Shown here in pieces: positions 8,741 through 49,810 of a stretch of DNA of 64,000 nt. The notes below the pieces were generated by a model, which saw nothing but the letters and a program-made list of their open reading frames with translations, had not been told where the DNA came from and searched no databases. How positions within the stretch are numbered: the stretch's first letter is position 1; the number at the start of each line of letters is the position of its first letter. The stretch is taken from assembly GCF_006345805.1 (NCBI RefSeq), contig NC_043001.1, forward strand, positions 62,806,001 to 62,870,000, in the 5' to 3' direction. The stretch is from Octopus sinensis (Eukaryota). A program made the position numbers and the translations under genes.

Positions 8741-10010
8741 CCAAAATAAGGGATTTTGCAGTATATTAGGAGGTCAGGGTACTTGATTACACGCAAAAAA
8801 TCCGGGCTTTTTTTTTTCGGTAAAAATCGTACGTGTGTTAATCTGAAAATTTACCCCGTTTCAAAGGTATGTAAAATTTCATTGAAAAAAAACTATTTTC
8901 CTTAAAGTTATGAGGGAAAAACTCGGATTTTGTGAATTTTCCGAAGTCCTCTCCCCACGCCCTTGGGAAAGATTTCCCCCACAAATTTCTTTATAATCGT
9001 AATCTATGCCGTTTGAAAGGTATTTATATAAAATTTCATTGAAAAAAAACCCATTTTCCTAAAAGTTATAAAGGAAAAGCTCGGATCTTGTGAATTTTCC
9101 GAAGTCCTCTTCCCACCCTCCCGTTGCTTTGCGCGCATTTTCTTTTTTCTATATTTGTTTCCTGCACATTGTTTTACACCCATTCCAGTATATTTTTTTT
9201 TCATTTTCATTTCCGGGTCAAGATATAAAAATGGTCATAAAAACAACAAAAAAATAGTGTAATAGGTGTAAAACAACTTCCTCTAAACGAATATGACAAA
9301 AAAATGCGCGCTTGCGAAAGGGGGGAAGGGGGAGGCCTCGAAAAATTCACATCGTGAATTTCCTAAAGCGTCTGAGGGTCTGACCCGGGCACAAAACCAA
9401 AAAATAGTGTAATATGTGTAAAACAACTTGCTCTAAACGAATATGACAAAGAAATGCGCTCTCGCGAAATGGGGAGGGGGGACAGGACTCGGAAAATTCA
9501 CATCTTCAGTCCATGGCCCTTAAACTATAGTGTTTGACCCGGGCCGGAAAAAAATTTTAAAATAGTGTAATTGGTGTAAAACTACTTGCTCGAAACGATT
9601 ATCAAGAACATACACACACACACACAAAGAGAAATGGTTGGTTCAAGGCAAGTGTGCATTGAATTGAATTTAAATAAGCAAGAAAGATATTAAAGAACAG
9701 GCCGGTAAAATTACAGATTAACACCCGCACGATTTTCACTAAGAAAAAAAAAAAAAACTCGGATTTTTTGCGTGGGATCAAGTACCCTGACCTCCTAATA
9801 TGCTGCAAATCCCATATTTTGGTCCGGAAGGGGGGGGGGGGGGTTTACCCCCACCCCCCGGAATTTTCAAAAGGAAAAAAAAAATCAGATTTTTTGCGTG
9901 GAATCAAGTAACTTGACCTCCTAATATGCTGCAAATCCCATATTTTGGTCCGGAATTGCTCCGGAAAGGGGGGGTAACCCCCTCCCCCGGAATTTTCACA
10001 AGGAAAAAAA
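8741..10010. repeat. Modular repeat element built of ~125-165-bp tandem subunits; related inverted modules at 15120-15710 and 17600-17770
   Basis: Module GGGATTTGCAGCATATTAGGAGGTCAGGGTACTTGAT at 8750, inverted at 9780 and 9905, and again at 15185, 15320 and 26610; module AATAGTGTAAT.GGTGTAAAACAACTT x3 at 9250-9600; module AAAGGTAT..AAAATTTCATTG x2 at 8860-9110. Confidence 0.7.
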
Positions 10011-10453
10011 AATAATATATCAATAATTTAGAAAAGAAACATTTCTAGAAAATAGTAAATTGAAGTGTGAACAAATTATTGGGCAAAATTGAAGTGTGAA
10101 CAAATCATTGGGCAAAAGAAGATTTGGCATACTGTCATGCTTTTTTAGCTGTCAGAAGTGAAAGTCGTCAACTTCGTGTATTTGCGTCCGGTTCGCTGTT
10201 AGGCTTATAAAACAATTGAAGTTCAGTTTAAAGTCTATAAATAAATACATTTCATTCCATGTTCTGTTTAAACTTTATAAATAAATATATTCTTGCAGTG
10301 TGTGTATATGTGGCTATATGTCTGACTAATGTGTGTGTCTGTATTTATTGTATGTGTGTATAAGTAGTTATATGCTTATATTATCCATTATAGTAATATT
10401 TGTCTGTTGAAACCTGTTTTAAGGCGGTCAATAGTTTAATTAAAGATGTATCT

Positions 10454-10511
<58 letters not shown>

Positions 10512-11801
10512 GTATATATATATATAAATATATATATATACATGTATAGACACATCTTTAATTAAACTATTGACCGCCTTAAAACGGGTTTCAACAGACA
10601 AATATTACTATAATGGATAATGTAATGGATAAAATTCAGACAAACTGCTACTTACCTCTTGCTGTCAAAAAGATGGATTGATTCTCAGCAAAACATACTG
10701 TTATGCTAAACCAGGGTTCCGCAAGAAGTTGCAAAACTGCTAAAATCGGCAATAATTTTTAATTCTCCTGTGCAGATATGTGTGCATAAGACTATTAAAT
10801 TATTGTACAGGGGTTCCTCGAGCCAGTGGAATGTTTGAATTACGCTCTGTGATAGTGTCAGGTTCTAATTTTTGCTTCTGATCTCTCTCTCTCTGCCCCC
10901 CCCTCTCTATCTCAAACTAATTTTTGTGTAGGTGGAGGTGTGGTGGGGAGACAGATGAACGATGTCTCATGAACCATTTCTTAAACATACATGATATAGT
11001 CTATAAATTTGGGATGTTTTTGAAAGATAATATATTTTATCATCAGAATATATATACTTTCTCACACTACAATTAAGATATATTTATTTTAAATCGTTCA
11101 TCTTTTCCCGCCCACAACAAAAATTGGCGCCAAAATTTTTCTAAATATCAGCAGAATGAACAACTGAGATAGAGAGGGGGGGGCAAAGAGAGATCAGAAG
11201 CAAAAATTAGAACCTGACACGGCACTGTCATGCCTTTGGGTGTCAAAAGTGAAAGTAGAGAAATCTGACGTCAGACGTCAACTTCGTGTATTTACGTCGT
11301 CTTTCGTTTATTTACGCCGTTTATTTACGTACCACTGAAATGCAAGTAAAAGCTTGTATGTATGTATGTATATATATATACATACATACACACATATATA
11401 TAATATACATGTATATATACATATATATATATATTTAATACATACATATATATAATATATACATGTATTTTTAATCGGTCTTTTTTCTTAACCACTATAC
11501 ATTATATACATACACACAGATAGATAGATAGATACACACACACACATATAATAGATATAAAATGTGTACGTGTGTACATTTTTCAGAAAAAAATTCATAC
11601 ATTTTAAATATCAATAGCATTTCTCTTATTTTTTACATGAAGTTTTCGAAAAATGAATTTAGAATGTAAAAATCAAATATATCAAATTAATAAACGCAAA
11701 TTATTTTCAAATATCATTTTCAACGGTGAGATTATCAAAATATAAACTTGAAGTTAAGTTTAAAAATAAATGCGATACTCATTCTGTCTTGATACTTATG
11801 C

Positions 11802-12708
11802 TCAAATACATGGATATAGCTGTCGAATTTGTTCTATCAACTTCCCGAATATATCATCCTTAAATTCATAGCGCCACATGAATTCGATGAGATGGGTCTG
11901 AAGTAAATTTCTGGCTGTTCCACATTCTCTCCTATTTCGAGTCTTTACGTGTTTCCATAAACATTCTATGTGGTTGGTTGTGGCAAATGTTACCGGATCA
12001 ACAAAATTTATAGAATGATTCACGGTCAAATGTCTGTATCCTAGCTGACTGAGTGTATTATACGAACGCCAAAGGTCGGATATTATTGTTGTACCAGGCA
12101 ATATACGCTCGCGTATAATCTGTAATAGAGTGTCCGCTGTTCGATTTTCAACTGCCACTAAAATACATCTTCTACTATCTCTTTCTAATGCACCAAACAC
12201 CCATTGCGTTTTAACCCGATGGCCAACATGATATTTTCTCTTAACAAACGCAGTTTCATCTATTTCAACGATTCTATTGGGTCCTCCCAGTTTAATATTC
12301 TGTGCAACATAATATTCTGCACATACATCGCGGCAAAAATTCCTCCAATCGGTTACCGCTACATTTGCTAAATGACATTCCTGTCCTATTCCTTTTGCTA
12401 AATCTTCTTTGGCCCAGTAAAACAAAATATCTATGATCTGTTGACACTTCAATTTGCTATTTTCTAAAAATGTTCCTTTTCTAATTGACACGGATTTTCT
12501 ACAAGGTCTTCCACACGACCATATTATTTCATCAGATATATTTTTTTTTCGTTACTTCTCTCATGGGAGCTCCACACGATGTACATATTTTCTGGGTATT
12601 CAAAAGGCCATGTCTCTTAAGCCAATTAATGCTATCTGCTGTTGTAGCAGTGGAGACGGCAATATCGCGGTGACTAATTCCTCTTAAACTTGGATATGCA
12701 AAAGCCAT
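11802..12708 (-). CDS. Merlin/ISXO2-like DDE transposase, left-arm copy (one frameshift at a 9-A run near 12545)
   Basis: ATG at 12708; ORF 11802..12491 carries GGPNRIVEIDE, IISDLWRSY, HLTVNHS, TTNHIECLW. Confidence 0.88.
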
Positions 12709-13106
12709 ATTAAAAATTGTTTAGCACGTGTTGATATCACACTGAAAGTTTCTAACTGAATAAATTTCAAAGTTTGAATTACGCACGTGGTGGTCAGTGG
12801 TCATTCTGATTGGTGTATGTAATCGCGGTGATGGTCATGGGGGTTCATTTGTGCAGATTTTGGTGTGATTTCTTTTTTAAAAACAATAATGAATAATGCA
12901 AGAATAATATATTCTTGCATTATTCATTATTGTTTTTAAAAAAGAAATCACACCAAATCTGCACAAATGAACCCCCATGACCATCACCGCGATTACATAC
13001 ACCAATCAGAATGACCACTGACCACCACGTGCGTAATTCAAACTTTGAAATTTATTCAGTTAGAAACTTTCAGTGTGATATCAACACGTGCTAAACAATT
13101 TTTAAT

Positions 13107-14011
13107 ATGGCTTTTGCATATCCAAGTTTAAGAGGAATTAGTCACCGCGATATTGCCGTCTCCACTGCTACAACAGCAGATAGCATTAATTGGCTTAAGA
13201 GACATGGCCTTTTGAATACCCAGAAAATATGTACATCGTGTGGAGCTCCCATGAGAGAAGTAACGAAAAAAAATATATCTGATGAAATAATATGGTCGTG
13301 TGGAAGACCTTGTAGAAAATCCGTGTCAATTAGAAAAGGAACATTTTTAGAAAATAGCAAATTGAAGTGTCAACAGATCATAGATATTTTGTTTTACTGG
13401 GCCAAAGAAGATTTAGCAAAAGAATAGGACAGGAATGTCATTTAGCAAATGTAGCGGTAACCGATTGGAGGAATTTTTGCCGCGATGTATGTGCAGAATA
13501 TTATGTTGCACAGAATATTAAACTGGGAGGACCCAATAGAATCGTTGAAATAGATGAAACTGCGTTTGTTAAGAGAAAATATCATGTTGGCCATCGGGTT
13601 AAAACGCAATGGGTGTTTGGTGCATTAGAAAGAGATAGTAGAAGATGTATTTTAGTGGCAGTTGAAAATCGAACAGCGGACACTCTATTACAGATTATAC
13701 GCGAGCGTATATTGCCTGGTACAACAATAATATCCGACCTTTGGCGTTCGTATAATACACTCAGTCAGCTAGGATACAGACATTTGACCGTGAATCATTC
13801 TATAAATTTTGTTGATCCGGTAACATTTGCCACAACCAACCACATAGAATGTTTATGGAAACACGTAAAGACTCGAAATAGGAGAGAATGTGGAACAGCC
13901 AGAAATTTACTTCAGACCCATCTCATCGAATTCATGTGGCGCTATGAATTTAAGGATGATATATTCGGGAAGTTGATAGAACAAATTCGACAGCTATATC
14001 CATGTATTTGA
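13107..14011 (+). CDS. Merlin/ISXO2-like DDE transposase, right-arm copy (one frameshift, missing G near 13421)
   Basis: ORF 13107..13427 (CTSC..WSC zinc region) joins ORF 13367..14011 (IDE / SD / TNHIE catalytic triad). Confidence 0.88.
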
Positions 14012-16317
14012 GCATAAGTATCAAGACAGAATGAGTATCGCATTTATTTTTAAACTTAACTTCAAGTTTATATTTTGATAATCTCACCGTTGAAAATGAT
14101 ATTTGAAAATAATTTGCGTTTATTAATTTGATATATTTGATTTTTACATTCTAAATTCATTTTTCGAAAACTTCATGTAAAAAATAAGAGAAATGCTATT
14201 GATATTTAAAATGTATGAATTTTTTTCTGAAAAATGTACACACGTACACATTTTATATCTATTATATGTGTGTGTGTGTATCTATCTATCTATCTGTATG
14301 TATGTATATAATGTATAGTGGTTAAGAAAAAAACCGATTAAAAATACATGTATATATTATATATATGTATGTATTAAATATATATATATATGTATATATA
14401 CATGTATATTATATATATGTGTGTATGTATGTATATATATATACATACATACATACAAGCTTTTACTTGCATTTCAGTGGTACGTAAATAAACGGCGTAA
14501 ATAAACGAAAGACGACGTAAATACACGAAGTTGACGTCTGACGTCAGATTTCTCTACTTTCACTTTTGACACCCAAAGGCATGACAGTGCCCCTGACACC
14601 ATCACAGAGCGTAATTCAAACATTCCACTGGCTCGAGGAAGCCCTGTGCAATAATTTAATAGTCTTATGCACACATACCTGCACAGGAGAATTAAAAATT
14701 ACTGCCGATTTTAGCAGTTTTGCAACTTCTTGCGGAACCCTGGTTTAGCATAACAGTATGTTTTGCTGAGAATTAATCCATTTTTTTGACAGCAAGAGGT
14801 AAGTAGCAGTTTGTCTGAACTTTATCCATTACATTATCCATTATAGTAATATTTGTCTGTTGAAACCCGTTTTAAGGCGGTCAATAGTTTAATTAAAGAT
14901 GTGTCTATACATGTATATATATATATATTTATATATATATATATACATGTGTATATATATGTATACACTTCTGACAGCTAAAAGCATGACAGTATGCCAA
15001 ATCTTCTTTTGCCCAATGATTTGTTCACACTTCAATTTTGCCCAATAATTTGTTCACACTTCAATTTACTATTTTCTAGAAATGTTTCTTTTCTAAATTA
15101 TTGATATATTTTTTTTTTCCTTGTGAAAATTCCGAGGGAGGGGGTTACCCCCCCCTTTCCGGAGCAATTCTGGACCAAAATATGGGATTTGCAGCATATT
15201 AGGAGGTCAGGGTACTTGATTCCACGCAAGAAATCTGAGGTTTTTTTCTTCTTCCTTGTGAAAATTCCGGGGTGGGGGTGTTACGCCCCCCTTTCCGGAG
15301 CAATTCCGGACCAAAATATGGGATTTGCAGCATATTAGGAGGTCAGGGTACTTGATCCCACGCAAAAAATCCGAGTTTTTTTTTTTTTTTTCTTAGTGAA
15401 AATCGTGCGGGTGTTAATCTGTAATTTTACCAAAAAGCCATAGCACCATCTTTAGTATCTGTTGTTATTATTATTATTATGGAGTTGAATGTGTGTGGTG
15501 AAGTTATCAATACATTAACCAACACCATTGAAGTGAAATAATAGGCTTAATATCTAGATCCGCACCCGGTGGGAAAAATGGAAACGATGTAAATTTTCCG
15601 AGGCCTCTCCCCCACCCACTTTCCCGAGCACGCATATTTTTGTCATATTCGTTTAGAGGAAGTTGTTTTACACCTATTACACTATTTTTTTTTTGGTTTT
15701 TATGACCGGGTCAAACGCTTTAGTTTGACCGTAAAAATTAACCTTTTAATTTTCTTCCCCTAAGACAAAAAAGGGGATGAAGGTAATTAAAATTTTGAAA
15801 AATGTGATTCGTCGTTTAGCTGCTGTTTCTAGCATGTCGTGTGTTCTGATTAGATACTTGTTACGTCTGCTAAGGAGGAGGCGAGGGGGTGTTCATTTAT
15901 TTTTTGAAAAATTGAAATTTTACAAATTTTGTTTTCAGAATCATAATCTCCGTATTTCGCCAAAAGAGATTTGTAAAAAAAAAAGTGAAAAACGGGGGGG
16001 GGGGGTGTTAAATTTTGATATGCCTATTTTTTTGCAGATTCCTAATCTCAGCAATCGAAAAGACGCGTTTCTGCAGAAAAAAATACCGAAAGTATGTGTG
16101 GTTCATGTCCTTTACCTCCGCCTCTAAATCGCCCTTAAATCACACATCAAAAATAATTTTGGTTAATTTTTTTTATGTAATCGTATGAATGTACAGAACA
16201 CAGATTAACAAAAATTTTGAAGGGTTATACAAGGTGCTTAAACCAGAATTCCGCCACAAGAATTATATGGGGTACTTAAACCAGAATTTCGTCGAAAAAT
16301 ATTGAAAAACAACAATA

Positions 16318-22997: not shown

Positions 22998-25740
22998 TCA
23001 TCATCATCATCATCATCATTAAGCGTCCGCTTTCCATGCTAGCATGGGTTGGACGGGTCAACTGGGGTCTGTGAAGCTGGAAGGCTTCGTCAGGCCCAGT
23101 CAGATCTGGCAGTGTTTCTACGGCTGGATGCCCTTCCTAACGCCAACCACTCCGTGAGTGTAGTGGGTGTTTTTTACGTGCCACCTGCACAGGTGCCAGA
23201 CAGAGCTGGCGAACGGCCACAAACGGATGGTGCTTTTACGTGTCACCAGCACGGGGCCAGGCGATGCTGGCAACGGACACAAACAGATGGTGCTTTTACG
23301 TGCCACCGACACGGGGCCAGACAGAGCTGGCAAACGGCCACGAACGGATGGTGCTTTTAGTGTCACCGGCACGGGGGCCAGCCGAGGCTGACAACGAACA
23401 CGAACGGATGGTGCTTTTACATGCCACCGACACGGGGCCAGACAGAGCTGGCAAACGGCCACGAACGGACGGTGCTTTTATGTGTCACCGGCACGGGGGC
23501 CAGCCGAGGCTGGCAACGGACGCGAACGGATGGTGCTTTTACGTGCCACCGACACGGGGCCAGACAGAGCTGGCAAACGGCCACGAACGGACGGTGCTTT
23601 TATGTGTCACCGGCACGGGGGCCAGCCGAGGCTGGCAACGGACGCGAACGGATGGTGCTTTTACGTGCCACCGACACGGTTGCCAGACAGAGCTGACAAA
23701 CGGCCACGAACGGACGGTGCTTTTACGTGTCACCGGCACGGGGGCCAGCCGAGGCTGGCAACGAACACGAACGGATGGTGCTTTTACATGCCACCGACAC
23801 GGGGCCAGACAGAGCTGGCAAACGGCCACGAACGGACGGTGCTTTTACGTGTCACCGGCACGGGGCCAGGCAGAGCTGGCAAACGGCCACGAGCGAATGG
23901 TGCTTTTACGTATCACCGGCACGGGTGCCAGACGAGGCTGACAGCGGACACGAACGGATGGGTCACTTAACCCCTGCTTTCTGATATATGATTTGATTTT
24001 GATTGTTCTCACTGGTCTTGCCGGGTCTTCTCACGCACAGCATACTTCCATAGGTCTCGGTCTCTGGTCATTTCCTTGGTGAGACCTAGAGTTCGAAGGT
24101 CGTGCTTCACCACCTTGACCCAGGTTTTCCTGGGTCTACTTCTTCCACAGGTCCCCTCAACTGCCAGGGTGTGGGACTTTTTCACACACCTATCTTCATC
24201 CATTCTCACCACATGACCATACCAGCGCAATCGTCTCTCTTGCACACAACATCTGATGGCTCTTAGGTCCAACTTTTCTCTCAAGGTACTTACACTCTGT
24301 CGACTATGAACACTGACATTACACATCCAACGGAGCATACTAGCTTCATTTCTCGCGAGCTTACGCATGTCCTCAGCAGTCACGGCCCATGTTTCACTGC
24401 CATATAGCATGGCTGTTCGTACACATGCATCATACAGTCTGCCTTTTACTCTGAGCGAGAGGCCTTTAGTCACCAACAGAGGTAAGAGCTCCCTAAACTT
24501 TGCCCAGGCTATTCTTACTCTAGCCGTTACACTTTCAGCACACCCACCCCCACTACTGACTTGGTCACCAAGATAACGGAAGCTATCAACTACTTCTAGT
24601 TTTTCCCCCTGGAAAGTGACGGAAGTTGTTTTCTGCAGATTTTCAGAGGTTAATGCTCCCGAGCATCTGCCACATACAAAAACCATCTTCCTAGTTAGCC
24701 TTCCTATGACATTGCTGCACCTCTTATGTGTCCATAGCTTACACTGGTGCATCTTATAGAGTTTCTACCTACACCTTTTCTACAGATCGAGCAGGGCCAT
24801 CTACCTGAAGGCGTTTGTGATTTGTCTACCTTCCTACTTATTAGGACTTTGGTTTTAGCTAGGTTGACTCTAAGGCCCTTCGATTCTAAACCATGCTACC
24901 ACACCTGAGACTTCTTCTCCAGTTCTGATAATGACTCAGCAATTAGAGCAAGGTCATCAGCATAGAGGAGCTCCCAGGGGCATCCTGTCTTGAATTCCTC
25001 CGTTATTGCCTGGAGGACTATGATAAATAGGAGGGGGCTGAGGACTGAGCCTTGGTGGACCCCACCTCTACACGGAATTCTTCACTGTACTCATTTCCAA
25101 CCCTCACCTTACTAGCAGCATCCCTGTACATGGCTTGCACAGCTCTCACTAACCATTCATCTATTCCTAGTTTCCTCATTGACCACCATATGAGGGATCG
25201 GGGGACCCTGTCGAAGGCTTTCTCCATGTCAACAAAAGCCAGGTACAGGGGCTTATCTTTGGCTAGGTATTTCTCCTGCAGCTGCCTTACCAGGAATATA
25301 GCATCAGTGGTACTTTTCCCTGGCACAAAACCAAACTGCATCTCATCTAAACTAACTCTCTCTCTAATTAGTTGGCTTATGACCCTCTCTGTAACCTTCA
25401 TCACCTGATCCAACAGCTTGATACCTCTGTAATTATTTGTATCTAGGGCATCACCTTTACCTTTGTAGCAGTTGACTATTATGTTGCTACACCAGTCATT
25501 GGGTATGACTCCTTCATGTATCACCTGATTAACTATACAGGTGACTAGGCTATAGCCGACACTACCAGATATTTTGAGCATCTCTGCAGTGATACCAGAT
25601 GGGCCTGGGACTTTCCCTGTCTTCATGCTTCTAATTGCCTTAGCTACCAAGGAACTATCAACCCTGATAGCTGGTCCCTCTGTTGGGTCAACGTTCGGCA
25701 GACTCTCTTTATCCCATTCATTTTCTTTATTCAGCAACCT
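22998..25740 (-). mobile_element. Young 5'-truncated RTE LINE with expanded 3' UTR array
   Basis: ORFs 25018..25737 and 24009..24752 are nearly identical to ORF 31641..33506; (GAT)n tail at 22998; 5' junction abuts (TA)n. Confidence 0.95.
23165..23960 (-). repeat. Tandem array of ~61-bp units (12 units plus the terminal unit) in the RTE 3' UTR
   Basis: GGTGCTTTT recurs at 23229, 23289, 23350, 23410, 23471, 23532, 23593, 23654, 23716, 23777, 23838, 23899. Confidence 0.95.
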
Positions 25741-25742
25741 TC

Positions 25743-25799
<57 letters not shown>

Positions 25800-26694
25800 C
25801 AGAGAATGAGACATCGTTCATCTGTCTCTCAACCACACCTCCACCTACACAAAAATTAGTTTGAGAAAGAGAGGGGGGCAGAGAGAGATCAGAAACAAAA
25901 ATTAGAACGTGACATTTCTGCTAACCTGTCGTAATTGCTTAATTAAGACTTTGTTTAAATTGAAAGGTGCAAATATGTGACTATGTGACGAGGTTGAAAA
26001 AAAATACCCCAATATCTCTACATCAGCAAGATATCGTCTTATTTGGTCGAATGTGAATTCAGTACAGGAGAAACTGGTTTGAAATTGGAACATGTGGCGA
26101 TCTACGGCTGAAGTTAACAAAATTATCTCCTCAAATCAAGGATCTGTGCCGTATGCACCAGGCACAGGGTTCTCACTAAATTAGCCGGTGTCTGTTGGCC
26201 AGGTAATTAAATTAAAAATCGTGTTTCTATATTTGAAAAAAAAATGTTGATGGGTACCAGAGTTTTTGTTATTAAAAAGTGGCTCGCCGGAAAAAATGGT
26301 TGGGAAACACTGATCTCACGGAAGTCTGTATAATCAACTGAATCAATCGGGTATAGTGCTTATCTAATTGACTACTATTTTGCTACACTCATAGCCCTGC
26401 GGAAATGTCATAAAAAAGAAAATGAAGGACATATATATATAACATATATTTCTGTTTATTCGTATAAATCATTGAAATTGTTGCACAGACACGACTACAC
26501 CAATTATACACTCTTTCTATATCACCCCACTCCATTTTTCGAACCGCAATTCATTCAACGAAAAAAACAACAAAAAATCCAATTCGCCACCCTCTTTTCA
26601 GAACCAGAATATGGGATTTGTAGCATATTAGGGTAAGGAGGTCAAAGTACTTGATTCCACGCAAAAAATCCGAATTAAAAAAAAATTAATTTTT

Positions 26695-30716: not shown

Positions 30717-33700
30717 TCAGAGTATGCGACAGAATACTTAAGATTAGATTAGCACTTCATCATAGTTTAGCAACCATTATATCAGCCTATGCTCCTCAGT
30801 CGGGGCTACCTGATGGACAGAAAGACCGATTCTATGACACTCTACTGCAGACTACCTCGTTGACAAACGACAGAGACCTTCTCTTTGTGGCTGGTGACTT
30901 CAATGGTCACGTTGGACAACATGCTGGGGGCTTCCATGGCGTACATGGAGGCTATGGCTCTGGTTCCCGCAACGAGGAGGGAACCAGGCTGCTGGAGTTC
31001 AGCGATGCAAATAATCTTATGATTTGCAACACTAACTTCAGGAAACCTACCAGCCACCTAGTCACCTACCGATCGGGCCAACATACCAGCCAAATTGACT
31101 ACATCCTTGCCAGGCAAAGGGAGAGATGGCTACTTATAAGTGCCAAAACCTTCCCAGGCGAAGAATGTACCCCACAACATAGACTGGTAGTTAGTGACTT
31201 TAGGATCAGGAGTAGGAGGACAACCAGAAGACGACCAACATGGAGAAGAAGGATCTGGAAGCTTAAGGATCCTGTGAATGGACAGAGATTTAGAGACATG
31301 TTCCTTGAACCCTTTGACGAAGTAGAAGGGGATAGAGTATCACATGGGGTAGAGGACAACTGGACGTTTCTAAGGGACAACCTGCTGAGAGCCACTGACC
31401 AGATCTGTGGCTGGTGCAAAGTCCCCTCTCGTCCCAAGGTAACGTGGTGGTGGAACAGTGTCGTAGACAGGGCTATTAGAGAAAAGAGACAGACTTGGAA
31501 GCACTGGAAGAATGGTGGTAGCAGGGAATTGTATCAGACTGCTAAAAGGGAAGCTAGGAGACAGGTCTATCTAGCCAGAGGGGAAGCAGATAAGAAAAAA
31601 ATTTGCCAATGTTCTGCGCCGTGAGGACCAAAGACTGGAGGTGTTTCGCGTTGCAAGACAGTGTGTGAGAGAGAATTGTGATGTGGTGGGAGAGAAGTGT
31701 GTTCGCATGGAAGATGGCTCACTTGCGCTAAACGAGGATGCAAAGAGAGAGGCTTGGAGACGCCACTATAAAAGGTTGCTGAATAAAGAAAATGAATGGG
31801 ATAAAGAGAGTCTGCCGAACGTTGACCCAACAGAGGGACCAGCTATCAGGGTTGATAGTTCCTTAGTAGCTAAGGCAATTAGAAGCATGAAGACAGGGAA
31901 AGCCCCAGGCCCATCAGGTATCACTGCAGAGATGCTCAAAATATCTGGTAGTGTCGGCTATAGCCTAGTCACCTGTATAGTTAATCAGGTGATACATGAA
32001 GGAGTCATACCCAATGACTGGTGTAGCAGCATAATAGTCAACTGCTACAAAGGTAAAGGTGATGCCCTAGATACAAATAATTACAGAGGTATCAAGCTGT
32101 TGGATCAGGTGATGAAGGTTACAGAGAGGGTCATAAGCCAACTAATTAGAGAGAGAGTTAGTTTAGATGAGATGCAGTTTGGTTTCGTGCCAGGGAAAAG
32201 TACCACTGATGCTATATTCCTGGTAAGGCAGCTGCAGGAGAAATACCTAGCCAAAGATAAGCCCCTGTACCTGGCTTTTGTTGACATGGAGAAAGCCTTC
32301 GACAGGGTCCCCCGATCCCTCATATGGTGGTCAATGAGGAAACTAGGAATAGATGAATGGTTAGTGAGAGCTGTGCAAGCCATGTACAGGGACGCTGCTA
32401 GTAAGGTGAGGGTTGGCAATGAGTACAGTGAAGAATTCCGGGTAGAGGTAGGGGTCCACCAAGGCTCAGTCCTCAGCCCCCTCCTATTTATCATAGTCTT
32501 CCAGGCAATAACGGAGGAATTCAAGACAGGATGCCCCTGGGAGCTACTCTATGCTGATGACCTTGCTCTAATTGCTGAGTCATTATCAGAACTGGAGAAG
32601 AAGTTTCAGGTGTGGAAGCATGGTTTAGAATCGAAGGGCCTTGGAGTCAACCTAGCTAAAACCAAAGTCCTAATAAGTAGGAAGGTAGACAAATCACAAA
32701 CGCCTTCAGGTAGATGGCCCTGCTCGATCTGTAGAAAAGGTGTAGGTAGAAACTCTATAAGATGCACCAAGTGTAAGCTATGGACACATAAGAGGTGCAG
32801 CAATGTCATAGGAAGGCTAACTAGGAAGATGGTTTTTGTATGTGGCAGATGCTCGGGAGCATTAACCTCTGAAAATCTGCAGAAAACAACTTCCGTCACT
32901 TTCCAGGGGGAAAAACTAGAAGTAGTTGATAGCTTCCGTTATCTTGGTGACCAAGTCAGTAGTGGGGGTGGGTGTGCTGAAAGTGTAACGGCTAGAGTAA
33001 GAATAGCCTGGGCAAAGTTTAGGGAGCTCTTACCTCTGTTGGTGACTAAAGGCCTCTCGCTAAGAGTAAAAGGCAGACTGTATGATGCATGTGTGCGAAC
33101 AGCCATGCTACATGGCAGTGAAACATGGGCCGTGACTGCGGAGGACATGCGTAAGCTCGCGAGAAATGAAGCTAGTATGCTCCGTTGGATGTGTAATGTC
33201 AGTGTTCATAGTCGACAGAGTGTAAGTACCTTGAAAGAAAAGTTGGACCTAAGAGGCATCAGATGCTGTGTGCAAGAGAGACGATTGCGCTGGTATGGTC
33301 ATGTGGTGAGAATGGATGAAGATAGGTGTGTGAAAAAGTGCCACACCCTGGCAGTTGAGGGGACCTGTGGAAGAGGTAGACCCAGGAAAACCTGGGTCGA
33401 GGTGGTGAAGCACGACCTTCGAACTCTAGGTCTCACCAAGGAAATGACCAGAGACCGAGACCTATGGAAGTATGCTGTGCGTGAGAAGACCCGGCAAGAC
33501 CAGTGAGAACAATCAAAATCAAATCATATATCAGAAAGCAGGGGTTAAGTGACCCATCCGTTCGTGTCCGCTGTCAGCCTCGTCTGGCCCCCGTGCCGGT
33601 GATACGTAAAAGCACCATTCGCTCGTGGCCATTTGCCAGCTCTGCCTGGCCCCGTGTCGGTGGCACGTAAAAGCACCATCCGTTCGTGTTCGTTGCCAGC

Positions 33701-36674: not shown

Positions 36675-38395
36675 TCTATATATATAAAACTGAGAATGTG
36701 TGTCTGTCTGTCTGTGTGTTTCCCTAAAACTTGAGAACTACTCAACCAATTTCGTTCAAATTTTACACATACCTTACTTAAGGTCCGGGGAGTGTCATCG
36801 GCAAAAAAATCTTAACTTTTTCCTTAGGGCGTTGTTGTGTTGCATTTGCAAATATGTAAACAAGGGTTCTGACACTGCAACATTTCAACTTCAACAAGAA
36901 TACTGCCAGGATGAGGTGATGCATTATCAAATGGGACGGTACATAAGTAGCAACAAGGCTTTCTGGCGCATCTTTGGCTTTCCAATTGACCAACGACACC
37001 CCGCCATTCAACAGTTTGCAGTGCACCTGGAAAATGGTCAAAGAATGTACTTCACCGATGCTAATGCTTCTCTGTTGGCAGAGGAACCAAGGGATAGCAC
37101 ACTCACTGCATTCTTCAAGCTTTGTCAAGTGGATCCATTCGCTCAAACCTTGCTGTATTCACAGATTCCATCGTATGACACATGGAATGGAAAAAAATGG
37201 GCCCCATGGAAAGCATACGCCAATGCGAGGGACGAATCTTCTTCCTCAATGCTCCTGGAGGGACAGGAAAAACATTTATTACAAAGCTTCTCCTTGCAGA
37301 AGTCAGGCAGCATCAGGACATTGCAGTAGAGCTGATAAAGTTCAAGCATGCCTAAAGTCCTCTACCCTGTGGCATCATGTTACAATCCTCAGTCTCACCA
37401 CTAACATGAGAGCTCAGCTACACGGCGACAAAATGTCCACAAAGTTTGCACAGGACATTTTGACACTTGGTGAAGGCAAGATGCCTCTCGATGCTGCAGG
37501 ACAAATGGAAGTGTGGTCATTTTCCTCTGTTGTTAATTCTGTAGATGACCTCAAAAACAAAGTCTTTCCCAACTTCACACAAAACTACCAAAATCTCAAT
37601 TGGCTGTGTGAAAGAGCAATATTAGCTCCAAAAAACGTCGCTGTTAACAAAATTAATCAACAGCTAATGCATTCTCTTCCTGGCACTATACACACTTACA
37701 AGTCTGTTGATACAATTCCAGATATAAATGAAGTTGTGAACTATCCTCCTGAATTTCTCAGTTCACTGGAGCCTCCTGGACTACCTCCATACATATTAGC
37801 ACTTAGAGTTGGAACTCCTGTAATGCTACTCCGTAATCTGGAACCACCAAGACTTTGCAATGGAGCACGACTGGTGATAAAGTAAATGATGTCACACGTT
37901 ATCGAGGCAATCATTCTTTCTGGATGTGGAAAAGGTAATGACGTCTTTATTCCAAGATTTCCTCTTACTCCATCAGGAGCAGAAATTCCATTTACATTCA
38001 AAAGACTGCAATTCCCCCTTCGTGTCAGCTTTACCATGTCCATTAACAAATCTCAGGGTCAAACCCTCTCTGTAGCTGGTCTTCTCTTGGAAGAGCCCTG
38101 CTTCTCGCATGGGCAACTGTATGTTGGCTGCTCAACAGTAGGAACCAAAAGAAACCTTTTTGTATATGCTCCTCAAGGAAAAACAAGGAACATTGTTTAC
38201 AACGAGGTGTTATAATCTCAACAGCCAGGAGGTATATACATGATCCCTTTTTTTTTTTTAACAAACTTCATGTACTTTCATGTATTTCTATTAATATACA
38301 TATATATGTGTGTGTGTGTGTATCCATGTATATATAACAGAAAAGTCTAATTCTTCAATTGAATGTAACCGAGCAATGCCGGGTATCTCTGCTAG
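36675..38395 (+). mobile_element. Internally deleted Helitron with Rep C-terminal and PIF1-like helicase fragments
   Basis: A|TC start and CTAG|T end; GRYISSNKAFWRIFGFPI (Rep), [50 protein letters not shown] (helicase motifs). Confidence 0.93.
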
Positions 38396-48027: not shown

Positions 48028-49810
48028 CTAGCAGAGATACCCGGCATTGCCCGGTTACATTCAATAGAAGAATTAGACTTTTCTGTTATATATATATATA
48101 TGGATATACACACACACACACACACACACAAGTATGTGTATATTAATATAAATACATGAAAGTACATGAAGTTTGTTAAAAAAAAGGGGATCATGTATAT
48201 ACATCCTGGCTGTTGAGATTATAACACCTCGTTGTAAACAATGTTCCTTGTTTTTCCTTGTGGAGCATATACAAAAAGGTTTCTTTTGGTTCCTACTGTT
48301 GAGCAGCCAACATACAGTTGCCCATGCGAGAAGCAGGGCTCTTCCAAGAGAAGACCAGCTACAGAGAGGGTTTGACCCTGAGATTTGTTAATGGACATGG
48401 CAAAGCTGACACGAAGGGGGAATTGCAGTCTTCTGAATGTAAATGGATGAAATAAGAGGAAATAAGAGGAAATCTTGGAATAAAGACGTCATCACCTTTT
48501 CCACATCCAGAAAGAATGATCGCCTCGATAACGTGTGACATCATTTTCTTTATCACCAGTCGTGCTCCATTGCAAAGTCTTGGTGGTTCCAGATTGCGGA
48601 GTAGCATTACAGGAGTTCCAACTTTAAGTGCTAATATGTGTGGAGGTAGTCCAGGAGGCTCCAGTGAACTGAGAAATTCAGGAGGATAGTTCACAACTTC
48701 ATTTATATCTGGAATTGTATCAACAGACTTGTAAGTGTGTATAGTGCCGGGAAGATTAGCTGTTGATTAATTTTGTTAACAGTGACATTTTTTGGAGCTA
48801 ATATTGCTCTTTCACACAGCCAATTGAGATTTTGGTAGTTTTGTGTGAAGTTGGGAAAGACTTTGTTTTTGAGGTCATCTACAGAATTAACAACAGAGGA
48901 AAATGACCACACTTCCATTTGTCCTGCAGCATCGAGAGGCATCTTGCCTTCACCAAGTGTCAAAATGTCCTGTGCAAACTTTGTGGACATTTTGTCGCCG
49001 TGTAGCTGAGCTCTCATGTTAGTGGTGAGACTGAGGATTGTAACATGATGCCACAGGGTAGAGGACTTTAGGCATGCTTGAACTTCATCAGCTCTAGTGC
49101 CTTTCAGAATGACAGGAAGAGTTGGCCTGAAATCACCTGAGAACAGAAGCGTTACACCTCCCATTGGAGCCTGACAGTCTCGGATGTCTTTCAGGTCTCT
49201 ATCTAATGCTTCCAAAGTATCCCTTGTGAGCCATAGTGCACTCATCCCAGACAATTACGTAACACATTTTAAGTACTTGTCCCTGATCTGAGCTTTTGTT
49301 GATGTTGCATGAAGGCATTTCGGATGCTGCTAAATTGAAAGGGAGTTTAAAAGTTGAGTGTGCTGTCCTACCACTGGGTAACAAAGTAGCTGCAATGCCA
49401 GAGGAGGCTACAGCTACTGCAATGCTACCTAACTTCTGCAAGGAGAAGCTTTGTAATAAATGTTTTTCCTGTCCCTCCAGGAGCATCGAGGAAGAAGATT
49501 CGTCCCTCGTGTTCGCGTACACTGTTAAGAATAGTTCTGTAGTCCTGCAGCTGGTCCAGAAGTAATTTAGGCTCATTTTCAACAATGTACTTTGAAAGCA
49601 CTTCAGTGTTGTAGGTTGTTTCACAAATGACAGCAATGGGAAGGCTATTTGACCCTGACCTGAATGCTTGTGGCAGGCCATACGTCGACAATTCATTTCC
49701 ACCCAGTTTAGCAATTCTGTCTTCAACGTCAATGAGTGTTTTGTTATAGATTTCATTGCTGATACCCTCCATGTCAGGATAGAGCAGTTGAGCTTGGTGC
49801 TGAAGGGGAC
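48028..49810 (-). mobile_element. Helitron copy with longer helicase remnant
   Basis: CTAG 3' end at 48028 matches the 38395 end; FFLDAPGGTGKT, VAVASSGIAATLL..GRTAHSTFKLP, IVWDECTMAH, GDFRPTLPV motifs. Confidence 0.9.

What the first reader, a model, noticed from the sequence alone, without database searches (positions are those of the whole stretch)
11213..14599. Fully palindromic Merlin transposon with two head-to-head transposase genes that moved as one unit
Seen: 11221-14591 is a single hairpin with ~1.69-kb arms and a 3-nt loop at 12907-12909. Each arm carries the same DDE transposase. The ATGs at 12708 and 13107 diverge from a shared, itself palindromic ~400-bp upstream region containing CCAAT and CACGTG motifs. 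Both ends are the gene-distal end (GGCACTGTCATGCC). An 8-bp direct repeat CCTGACAC flanks it, and the uninterrupted target (AACCTGACACTATCACAG) survives in the mirror arm near 10855, so the TSD is genuine. Established: Merlin/IS1016 elements make 8-9-bp TSDs, start with GG, and normally have short TIRs and one ORF. Inference: this is an autonomous fold-back architecture in which the whole element, gene included, is its own TIR. The arms could correct each other by gene conversion, extrude a cruciform, or yield dsRNA. I do not know of a described example.
Basis: partly seen in the sequence, partly recalled or inferred. Interest (0 to 1): 0.88.

Follow-up and report, generated by a model that had tools for sequence, protein, structure and literature searches.

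The report
Palindromic two-gene Merlin transposon, octopus
A 3.4-kb Merlin "jumping gene" in an octopus genome is a near-perfect mirror image of itself, with two back-to-back transposase genes; its clean 8-bp insertion footprint suggests it moved as one piece, but only this one copy was seen and both genes read as broken.

Summary
Window 11221-14591 is one palindrome with arms of 1686 and 1682 nt, 1681 matching positions, and a 3-nt centre at 12907-12909. It is flanked by an exact 8-bp direct repeat, CCTGACAC. A paralogous uninterrupted target lies at 10848-10868. Each arm carries an IS1595/Merlin DDE transposase gene. The closest relatives are Octopus sinensis and O. bimaculoides.

Three corrections apply.
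- As assembled, each gene copy has one different 1-nt frameshift. Both are derived, both are G/A run-length differences (one a 9-vs-8 A run), and they could be assembly errors. The inferred ancestral 301-aa protein is full-length with its catalytic residues.
- A conventional relative in O. sinensis has its own 5' end and an 8-bp TSD. The palindrome is therefore a recent derivative in which about 220 bp of 5' end was replaced by an inverted copy of the rest. The junction has only 1 nt of microhomology.
- TIRs that engulf transposase sequence are already described for Galileo. This locus is the extreme of a known trend.

Most likely reading: a fold-back inverted dimer of a Merlin element that then transposed as a unit. 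Whether it founds a mobile palindromic family could not be tested.

The parts
11213..11220 (.). Left copy of the 8-bp target-site duplication, CCTGACAC
   Evidence: Read directly. It is identical to 14592-14599, and the reconstructed empty site matches the mirror-arm paralogue.
11221..14591 (.). Whole palindromic Merlin element (3371 bp)
   Evidence: 1681 of 1686 aligned positions are complementary. GGCACTGTCATGCC sits at both ends.
11221..12906 (-). Left arm (1686 nt): terminus, AT-rich microsatellites, transposase gene on the - strand, 5' region
11221..11356 (+). Left terminal region. It starts GG, and contains TGACGTCAGACGTCA and repeated CGTTTATTTACG motifs. It is the presumed transposase-binding end.
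   Evidence: 87% identical over about 115 nt to the 5' end of the O. sinensis element, L001 9577-9688. It is 100% complementary to 14456-14591.
11357..11560 (.). AT-rich microsatellite block, (TATG)n/(TA)n/(GATA)n/(CA)n, between the terminus and the 3' UTR. Its mirror is 14252-14455.
   Evidence: The only arm-to-arm substitution lies here (11515 versus 14298).
11802..12708 (-). Left transposase copy (ATG at 12708, stop at 11802-11804). It is frameshifted by one extra T in the T9 run at 12541-12549.
   Evidence: Translations. ORF 11802-12491. Outgroups show the 9-nt run is derived.
12709..13106 (.). Shared, self-complementary 398-bp region between the two diverging ATGs. Each half has CCAAT and two CACGTG motifs. 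It is the presumed back-to-back promoters and 5' UTRs.
   Evidence: motifs; hairpin, z = -47.9. The half-region is 91.5% conserved in L001 9804-10001.
12907..12909 (.). Asymmetric centre, ATA. Homology of the right arm to conventional elements runs to 12906, so the left arm ends 3-4 nt earlier (1-nt microhomology).
   Evidence: L001 reads ...tttataaatAAATATATTCTTGCATT. The window reads ...gcaagaatAATATATTCTTGCATT.
12910..14591 (+). Right arm (1682 nt): 5' region, transposase gene on the + strand, 3' UTR, microsatellites, terminus
13107..14011 (+). Right transposase copy (ATG at 13107, stop at 14009-14011). It is frameshifted by loss of one G at 13422, with a premature stop at 13425-13427.
   Evidence: ORF 13367-14011. 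Outgroups show the deletion is derived.
14456..14591 (-). Right terminal region, the exact inverted copy of 11221-11356
14592..14599 (.). Right copy of the 8-bp target-site duplication, CCTGACAC
10848..10868 (-). Paralogous uninterrupted target. Its reverse complement reads TAGAACCTGACACTATCACAG. It lies in the mirror arm of an older inverted duplication.
   Evidence: It is colinear with 11150-11220 plus 14600-14660, with one mismatch next to the site.

Best explanation
This is a young inverted-dimer (fold-back) derivative of an octopus Merlin (IS1595-like DDE, cut-and-paste) transposon. A conventional progenitor had the order 5' end, about 220 bp of subterminal repeats, 5' UTR, single transposase gene, 3' UTR, 3' end. 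Its 5'-most part was lost and replaced by an inverted copy of everything downstream. The join sits at a self-complementary AATATATT with 1 nt of microhomology and a 3-nt asymmetric centre. That is the signature of snap-back or template-switch repair synthesis at a break, or of joining two nascent strands copied from the same end (inferred). The product has two identical outward-facing ends, a valid TIR pair. Transposase made in trans, or by its own then-intact genes, could therefore excise the whole 3.37 kb. It then integrated into CCTGACAC with the 8-bp staggered cut typical of Merlin. That footprint and the empty paralogous site are shown; the act of transposition is inferred. The two genes diverge from back-to-back copies of the native promoter region. 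Since insertion, or in the assembly process, each copy acquired one different 1-nt frameshift.
For: The palindrome is 99.7% complementary, and its boundaries coincide to the base with GG...CC Merlin termini. An exact 8-bp direct repeat flanks it, and a colinear paralogous empty site exists. The composite protein matches PF12762 at E = 1.4e-18. It aligns end to end with Merlin transposases from many phyla and keeps D150/D211/E248. A conventional relative in O. sinensis (L001 9578-11651, TSD AAACAAAG, 91.5% identity) has its own 5' end. Its homology to the window arm stops exactly at the palindrome centre. The 5' junction sequence ttctgtttaaactttataaataAATATATTCTTGCA is shared by L001, by the 73%-diverged L003 and by window 10262-10297, so the conventional 5' side is ancestral and the palindrome derived. 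Outgroups show both frameshifts are derived, so both genes were intact when the palindrome formed. The neighbouring older inverted duplication shows what an in-situ fold-back around a Merlin end looks like: mirrored flanks and no direct repeat. The young element instead has a direct TSD. Merlin is reported as recently active in O. vulgaris, with 2 families and 11 young copies (PMC13282606).
Against: Only one copy was seen, so mobility of the palindromic form rests on a single TSD and a paralogous, not orthologous, empty site. Neither ORF is intact in the assembly. A 1.7-kb-arm palindrome with a 3-nt spacer is expected to be unstable (my own knowledge of palindrome instability in yeast and mouse), so its persistence is surprising unless it is very young. 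The outer ~115 nt of both arms match the 5' end of the O. sinensis relative (87%) better than its 3' end. A single fold-back of an L001-like element does not predict that. It would require a progenitor with already homogenised long TIRs, or more than one template switch.
Confidence: 0.62

Rival explanations
1. In-situ rearrangement. A conventional Merlin inserted here and made the TSD. It was later converted on the spot into a palindrome by two template switches, or by inter-TIR recombination plus fold-back. The palindrome itself never moved.
For: Conventional relatives already have inverted homology at both ends: about 65-bp TIRs plus a 51-bp inverted copy of the 3' UTR beside the centre position (L001 9736-9786 versus 11386-11436). 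That could seed template switching. The region demonstrably undergoes local inverted duplication, as the outer palindrome and the 250-bp palindrome at 10376-10625 show.
Against: It needs the original 5' end to be replaced precisely to the last base next to the TSD. The two ends are identical over 265 nt, with no residual end-specific differences. In the relative, the two ends differ well within the first 65 nt. The in-situ palindrome next door has mirrored flanks and not a direct repeat.
Confidence: 0.15
2. Assembly artefact. A conventional element was mis-assembled into a palindrome, for example from fold-back chimeric long reads or a graph hairpin.
For: Three of the four arm-to-arm indels are run-length differences (CC versus C, T9 versus A8, T4 versus A3). 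That suggests an imperfectly polished long-read consensus. Identical arms also hamper short-read polishing.
Against: The palindrome ends exactly at transposon termini on both sides, and continues into non-mirrored flanks with an 8-bp direct repeat and a matching empty site. Chimeric reads fold at arbitrary points and carry mirrored flanks. No other short-spacer kilobase palindrome occurs in the 64 kb. The roughly 220 bp of 5' sequence of a conventional element would have to have been dropped.
Confidence: 0.08
3. Two independent insertions. One Merlin copy landed head-to-head next to or inside another, and the inner ends were later deleted.
For: Merlin fragments are nested in this neighbourhood (window 10028-10300), so self-nesting does occur.
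Against: The arms are symmetric to the base about one point, even through fast-evolving microsatellites. They differ by a single substitution. No inner terminus and no second TSD remain at the centre.
Confidence: 0.03

Closest known systems
Conventional Merlin elements (IS1595/IS1016-related DDE transposons), e.g. the O. sinensis copy in VCDQ01004827.1 (L001 9578-11651)
   Same: The same transposase family (PF12762). The O. sinensis protein is 90% identical in amino acids and the DNA 91.5% identical. Also shared: GG termini, 8-bp TSD, the same 5' UTR/promoter with CCAAT and CACGTG, and the same 3' UTR.
   Different: The conventional copy has one gene, roughly 65-bp imperfect TIRs (83%) and a distinct 5' subterminal region of about 220 bp. 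Here that region is missing, the gene is present twice, and the TIR is the whole 1.69-kb half-element. Published Merlin TIRs span 24-462 bp (PMC8101967).
Galileo (P superfamily, Drosophila) copies with extended TIRs
   Same: Internal, transposase-coding sequence is recruited into the TIRs. Copy 147 has TIRs of 1575 and 1608 bp (97.5% identical) that include more than 500 bp of the TPase, and it is flanked by identical TSDs. The authors invoke template switching during gap repair (PMC4168063).
   Different: A different superfamily. Galileo's extended TIRs hold only part of the ORF, a spacer remains, and no functional copy was found. Here the complete gene and promoter are duplicated and the spacer is 3 nt.
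Mu killer (maize MuDR derivative) and Ac composite insertions
   Same: Both are inverted duplications of a DNA transposon that include one terminus twice plus transposase sequence (PMC3440606; 10.1101/2020.01.07.897926). They arise from aberrant transposition or repair.
   Different: Those are partial duplications at rearranged loci, and they act through read-through hairpin RNA to silence the family. Here both gene copies are complete, the unit has a clean TSD, and no RNA data exist.
Fold-back elements (Drosophila FB, C. elegans Tc4) and bacterial composite transposons with inverted IS copies (Tn5/Tn10); from my own knowledge, not tested here
   Same: Very long inverted terminal repeats make up most of the element. 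In Tn5/Tn10, two inverted transposase-encoding modules mobilise as one unit using their outer ends.
   Different: FB and Tc4 arms are non-coding repeat arrays. Tn5/Tn10 modules are complete IS elements with inner ends and cargo between them. Here the two modules lack inner ends and abut directly.

Membership tests
Merlin superfamily (eukaryotic IS1595/IS1016-like DNA transposons) | Transposase with a DDE_Tnp_IS1595 (ISXO2-like) catalytic domain | tested here: met
   PF12762, E = 1.4e-18, 67.8 bits against a cut-off of 27. There were 398 homologues at E <= 1e-10, nearly all annotated PF12762.
Merlin superfamily (eukaryotic IS1595/IS1016-like DNA transposons) | Conserved D, D, E catalytic residues | tested here: met
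   D150, D211 and E248 of the composite protein fall in invariant or nearly invariant columns of a 13-sequence alignment. This holds only for the composite, since each assembled copy has a frameshift.
Merlin superfamily (eukaryotic IS1595/IS1016-like DNA transposons) | Terminal inverted repeats beginning 5'-GG | tested here: met
   GGCACTGTCATGCC sits at both ends. The criterion is from PMC8101967.
Merlin superfamily (eukaryotic IS1595/IS1016-like DNA transposons) | 8- or 9-bp target-site duplication | tested here: met
   CCTGACAC on both sides, with a colinear paralogous empty site. The relative L001 has the 8-bp AAACAAAG.
Merlin superfamily (eukaryotic IS1595/IS1016-like DNA transposons) | Usual architecture: a single transposase ORF between TIRs of 24-462 bp | tested here: not met
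   There are two inverted gene copies, and the TIR equals the 1.68-kb half-element. This is an architectural norm, not a catalytic criterion.
Merlin superfamily (eukaryotic IS1595/IS1016-like DNA transposons) | N-terminal zinc-chelating motif as in most IS1595 members | tested here: inconclusive
   C42-x2-C45 and C65-x3-C69 are visible, and C42 and C65 are conserved in the alignment. No Pfam zinc-finger model hit at E <= 0.01.
Fold-back (FB-like) transposons | Long inverted terminal repeats making up most or all of the element | tested here: met
   The arms are 1686 and 1682 nt of a 3371-nt element.
Fold-back (FB-like) transposons | Arms built of non-coding tandem subrepeats; the transposase, if any, lies in the loop | tested here: not met
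   The arms are a complete gene plus its UTRs, and the loop is 3 nt.
   There are no further copies in the 64-kb window. The three octopus loci fetched are single-gene. The source genome could not be searched. Exact-protein look-ups found nothing. The metagenome junction scan gave one chance bacterial hit.

The most novel reading that the evidence does not exclude
The palindromic form is not a one-off. It would be a propagating architecture in this octopus: an autonomous Merlin lineage in which the entire element, with two divergently transcribed transposase genes, serves as its own perfect TIR. It would be maintained by arm-to-arm correction and present as several copies with different 8-bp TSDs.
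Probability: 0.2. Interest if true: 0.75.

Novelty: new variant of a known kind. Interest (0 to 1): 0.47.

Why it matters
If the structure is real and moved as a unit, a DDE cut-and-paste transposase would tolerate a substrate that is one giant hairpin-prone palindrome. It would also show the end-point of the TIR-extension process described for Galileo: the whole gene and promoter absorbed into the TIR. That bears on how long-TIR and fold-back elements, and palindromic MITEs, are born by repair-synthesis template switching. It also bears on how inverted transposase duplications arise that can later trigger small-RNA silencing, as with Mu killer and Ac composite insertions. Finally, it bears on the stability of kilobase palindromes in an animal germline. 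The composite ORF is the most intact Merlin transposase among the octopus copies seen here. It is therefore a reasonable candidate for a transposition assay.

Tried and rejected
1. Other copies in the window. BLASTN of one arm against the masked window found only short Merlin fragments of other subfamilies at 10028-10297 and 14966-15096, and no second palindromic or full copy.

2. Related copies elsewhere. The three octopus loci reachable through annotated proteins (L001 and L003 from O. sinensis, L002 from O. bimaculoides) each have one gene and no inverted second copy.

3. Exact-protein look-ups of the three window ORFs (229, 214 and 106 aa) found nothing on record. The source genome's other copies therefore could not be reached.

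4. A scan of metagenome contigs for the 21-nt junction GCAAGAATAATATATTCTTGC gave one hit. It is an unrelated small hairpin in a bacterial-looking contig (L004) and is a chance match.

5. KolobokP 'composite-like' transposons were considered. They were rejected as an analogue because their long terminal repeats are direct, not inverted.

6. A systematic palindrome artefact was considered. The other long inverted repeats in the window are dispersed retrotransposon-like (LINE) and Helitron-like copies kilobases apart. The only other short-spacer palindrome is a 250-bp one at 10376-10625.

7. I tried to decide the direction of evolution, palindrome to conventional or the reverse. Conservation of the conventional 5' junction in three diverged lineages favours the palindrome being derived. 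The 5'-end-like sequence of both termini remains unexplained.
Full report
**Observation**

Window 11221-14591 (3371 bp) is a single palindrome.
- They differ by four 1-nt indels, all with the extra base in the left arm (11480, 12391, 12541, 12858), and one substitution (11515 C versus 14298 T).
- The centre is the 3-nt ATA at 12907-12909.
- The 398-nt segment between the two start codons folds as one hairpin (-240.8 kcal/mol; shuffles average -39.8; z = -47.9).
- The 14-mer GGCACTGTCATGCC occurs only at the two ends, in inverted orientation.

**Insertion footprint**

CCTGACAC lies immediately outside both ends, at 11213-11220 and 14592-14599. Joining the left flank to the right flank with one copy of the repeat gives a sequence colinear with the reverse complement of 10800-10930. 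That stretch reads ...GCAAAAATTAGAACCTGACAC(T/C)ATCACAGAGCGTAATTCAAACATTCC... and carries one CCTGACAC. It is a paralogous, not orthologous, empty site. It exists because the target lies in one arm of an older inverted duplication, with arms roughly 9233-10914 and 11165-11220 plus 14600-15707, 90-96% identical in the matching blocks.

**What it encodes**

Each arm carries a Merlin/IS1595-type transposase gene, but neither is intact as assembled.
- The left copy is shifted after codon 55 by a T9 run (12541-12549), where the right arm has A8.
- The right copy lacks one G at 13422 and terminates at 13425-13427.
- Alignment with three octopus outgroup copies shows that the 8-nt run and the GG are ancestral. 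Both frameshifts are therefore derived, and the palindrome originally carried two intact genes.
- Three of the four indels are run-length differences, so consensus error in the assembly is a live alternative.

The composite protein is 301 aa.
- It matches PF12762 (DDE_Tnp_IS1595) at E = 1.4e-18.
- It is colinear from end to end with homologues from molluscs, flatworms, cnidarians, sponges, spiders and nematodes.
- It keeps D150, D211 and E248 in conserved columns, plus an N-terminal CxxC...CxxxC.
- The best hits are Octopus sinensis (90% identity) and O. bimaculoides (81%), so the window is from an octopus. The rest of the window is dense in ORFs that look by eye like LINE, mariner and Helitron genes (not family-tested), which fits an octopus intergenic region.

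**Relatives and origin**

The O. sinensis locus L001 holds a conventional element (9578-11651).
- It is flanked by its own 8-bp TSD, AAACAAAG.
- It has one gene, interrupted by a 472-bp MITE, and imperfect TIRs of about 65 bp.
- It is 91.5% identical to the window arm from the gene outward.
- Its homology to the right arm runs leftward exactly to window 12906. L001 reads ...ctttataaatAAATATATTCTTGCATTATTC, and the window reads ...atgcaagaatAATATATTCTTGCATTATTC.
- To the left of that point, L001 has about 220 bp of its own 5' terminal and subterminal sequence. In the window, an inverted copy of the arm sits there instead.

The conventional junction ttctgtttaaactttataaataAATATATTCTTGCA recurs in the 73%-diverged L003 and in a Merlin fragment at window 10262-10297. 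The conventional 5' side is therefore old, and the 99.7%-identical palindrome is a recent derivative.

At the junction the left arm stops 3-4 nt short of the right arm, with 1 nt of possible microhomology. The progenitor sequence there (AATATATT) is self-complementary. I infer snap-back or template-switch repair synthesis at a break, or joining of two nascent strands copied from the same end during gap repair. This mechanism is inferred, not shown.

**One discordant detail**

The outer ~115 nt of both arms match the 5' end of L001 (87%). Beyond the shared ~65-bp TIR they do not match its 3' end, whereas the adjoining 3' UTR is clearly 3'-side sequence. Either the immediate progenitor already had long homogenised TIRs, or more than one switch occurred. 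I could not resolve this with one outgroup.

**Did it move as a unit?**

Three observations favour that reading.
- The palindrome's limits coincide to the base with transposon termini.
- The flanks are a direct 8-bp repeat and not mirror images.
- The empty-site paralogue has a single copy of the 8-mer.

A useful contrast lies in the same window. The older outer palindrome contains two outward-facing Merlin termini of another subfamily: GGCATACTGTCATGC... at 10127-10159, with its reverse complement at 14961-14993, similar to the 3' end of the O. bimaculoides copy L002. Its flanks are mirrored (10006-10126 versus 14994-15118, 99%) and show no direct repeat. That is what a fold-back formed in place looks like. 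The young element looks different.

In-situ conversion of a conventional insertion cannot be excluded. It would, however, require replacing the 5' end precisely up to the TSD. An assembly artefact is unlikely for the same boundary reasons. No other kilobase, short-spacer palindrome occurs in the 64 kb.

**Comparison with what is known**

Merlin elements are defined by the IS1595-type DDE domain, GG-initiated TIRs of 24-462 bp and 8-9-bp TSDs (PMC8101967). The element meets the catalytic, terminal and TSD criteria. It departs from the usual one-gene, short-TIR architecture.

Absorption of transposase-coding sequence into TIRs is documented for Galileo in Drosophila willistoni. Examples include TIRs of 1575 and 1608 bp containing more than 500 bp of the TPase, flanked by identical TSDs, which the authors attribute to template switching during gap repair and call unique to Galileo (PMC4168063). 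Inverted duplications of transposase genes that include duplicated termini are also known as Mu killer (PMC3440606) and Ac composite insertions (10.1101/2020.01.07.897926). Both act by hairpin RNA.

The octopus element is the extreme case: complete gene and promoter duplicated, a 3-nt spacer, and a different superfamily. I therefore rate it a new variant of a known kind. Merlin is reported as recently active in O. vulgaris, with 18 families, of which 2 have 11 young near-full-length copies (PMC13282606). That makes recent mobilisation plausible.

**What could not be done**

- Exact-protein look-ups of the window ORFs returned nothing.
- A metagenome scan for the junction returned only a chance bacterial hairpin.

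The existence of a palindromic family, the reality of the frameshifts, transcription and small-RNA output all remain open.

**Verdict**

The structure is real and correctly read. It is best explained as a fold-back inverted dimer of a Merlin element that transposed once as a unit (confidence about 0.6). Autonomy and family status are unproven. Interest is moderate.

Noticed in passing
window 9233-10914 versus 11165-11220 plus 14600-15707: An older inverted duplication surrounds the insertion site, with roughly 1.5-kb arms that are 90-96% identical in the matching blocks. The left arm has about 330 bp extra (10161-10488) compared with the right.
   Followed up: partly
window 10127-10159 and 14961-14993 (flanks 10006-10126 / 14994-15118): Two outward-facing Merlin termini of a second subfamily (GGCATACTGTCATGCTTTT(TT)AGCTGTCAGAAGTG, like the 3' end of the O. 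bimaculoides copy L002). Their flanks are mirror images (99%), not a direct TSD. This looks like a fold-back formed in place around a Merlin end.
   Followed up: partly
window 10028-10126 (mirror 14994-15096): A fragment of a Merlin transposase gene, 88-92% identical to window 13330-13381 and to L001. It directly abuts the outside of the terminus at 10127, which suggests Merlin nested in Merlin.
   Followed up: no
window 10376-10625: A 250-bp zero-spacer palindrome (94%) centred on a (TA)n tract. Only one half is present in the mirror arm (14829-14959). Like the Merlin palindrome, its centre is TA-rich and self-complementary.
   Followed up: no
window 10865-11213; paralogues 25806-25914 and 1016-1184: A MITE-like repeat of about 350 bp with roughly 60-bp inverted ends (TTCTAATTTTTGCTTCTGATCTCTC...). 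It forms the centre of the outer palindrome. The Merlin target CCTGACAC overlaps its right edge.
   Followed up: partly
window 23821-25741 versus 31772-33694; 37323-38256 versus 48178-49100: Two further large inverted duplications, 97-99% identical, with spacers of about 6 kb and 10 kb. They involve ORFs that look LINE-like and Helitron/PIF1-helicase-like by eye, but these were not family-tested.
   Followed up: no
window 9749-10012 and 15109-15380: Tandem units of about 136 bp (GGAATTTTCACAAGGAAAAAAAA...), 85-86% identical, present in both arms of the outer palindrome.
   Followed up: no
L001 10778-11249 (O. sinensis VCDQ01004827.1): A 472-bp MITE with perfect 44-bp TIRs (GGGCGATGTTTCGCTTGTCGTAGCACACG...) interrupts the transposase gene of the conventional O. 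sinensis Merlin. A similar element lies downstream of the L003 gene, at L003 11190-11605.
   Followed up: no
L001 9736-9786 versus 11386-11436: The conventional O. sinensis element carries a 51-bp inverted copy (86%) of its own 3' UTR, about 15 bp from the position that is the palindrome centre in the window. The family therefore already has discontinuous long TIRs reaching to the stop codon.
   Followed up: partly
window 11221-11356 / 14456-14591 versus L001 9577-9688: Both termini of the palindrome resemble the gene-proximal (5') end of the O. sinensis relative (87%), not its gene-distal end. This remains unexplained.
   Followed up: partly
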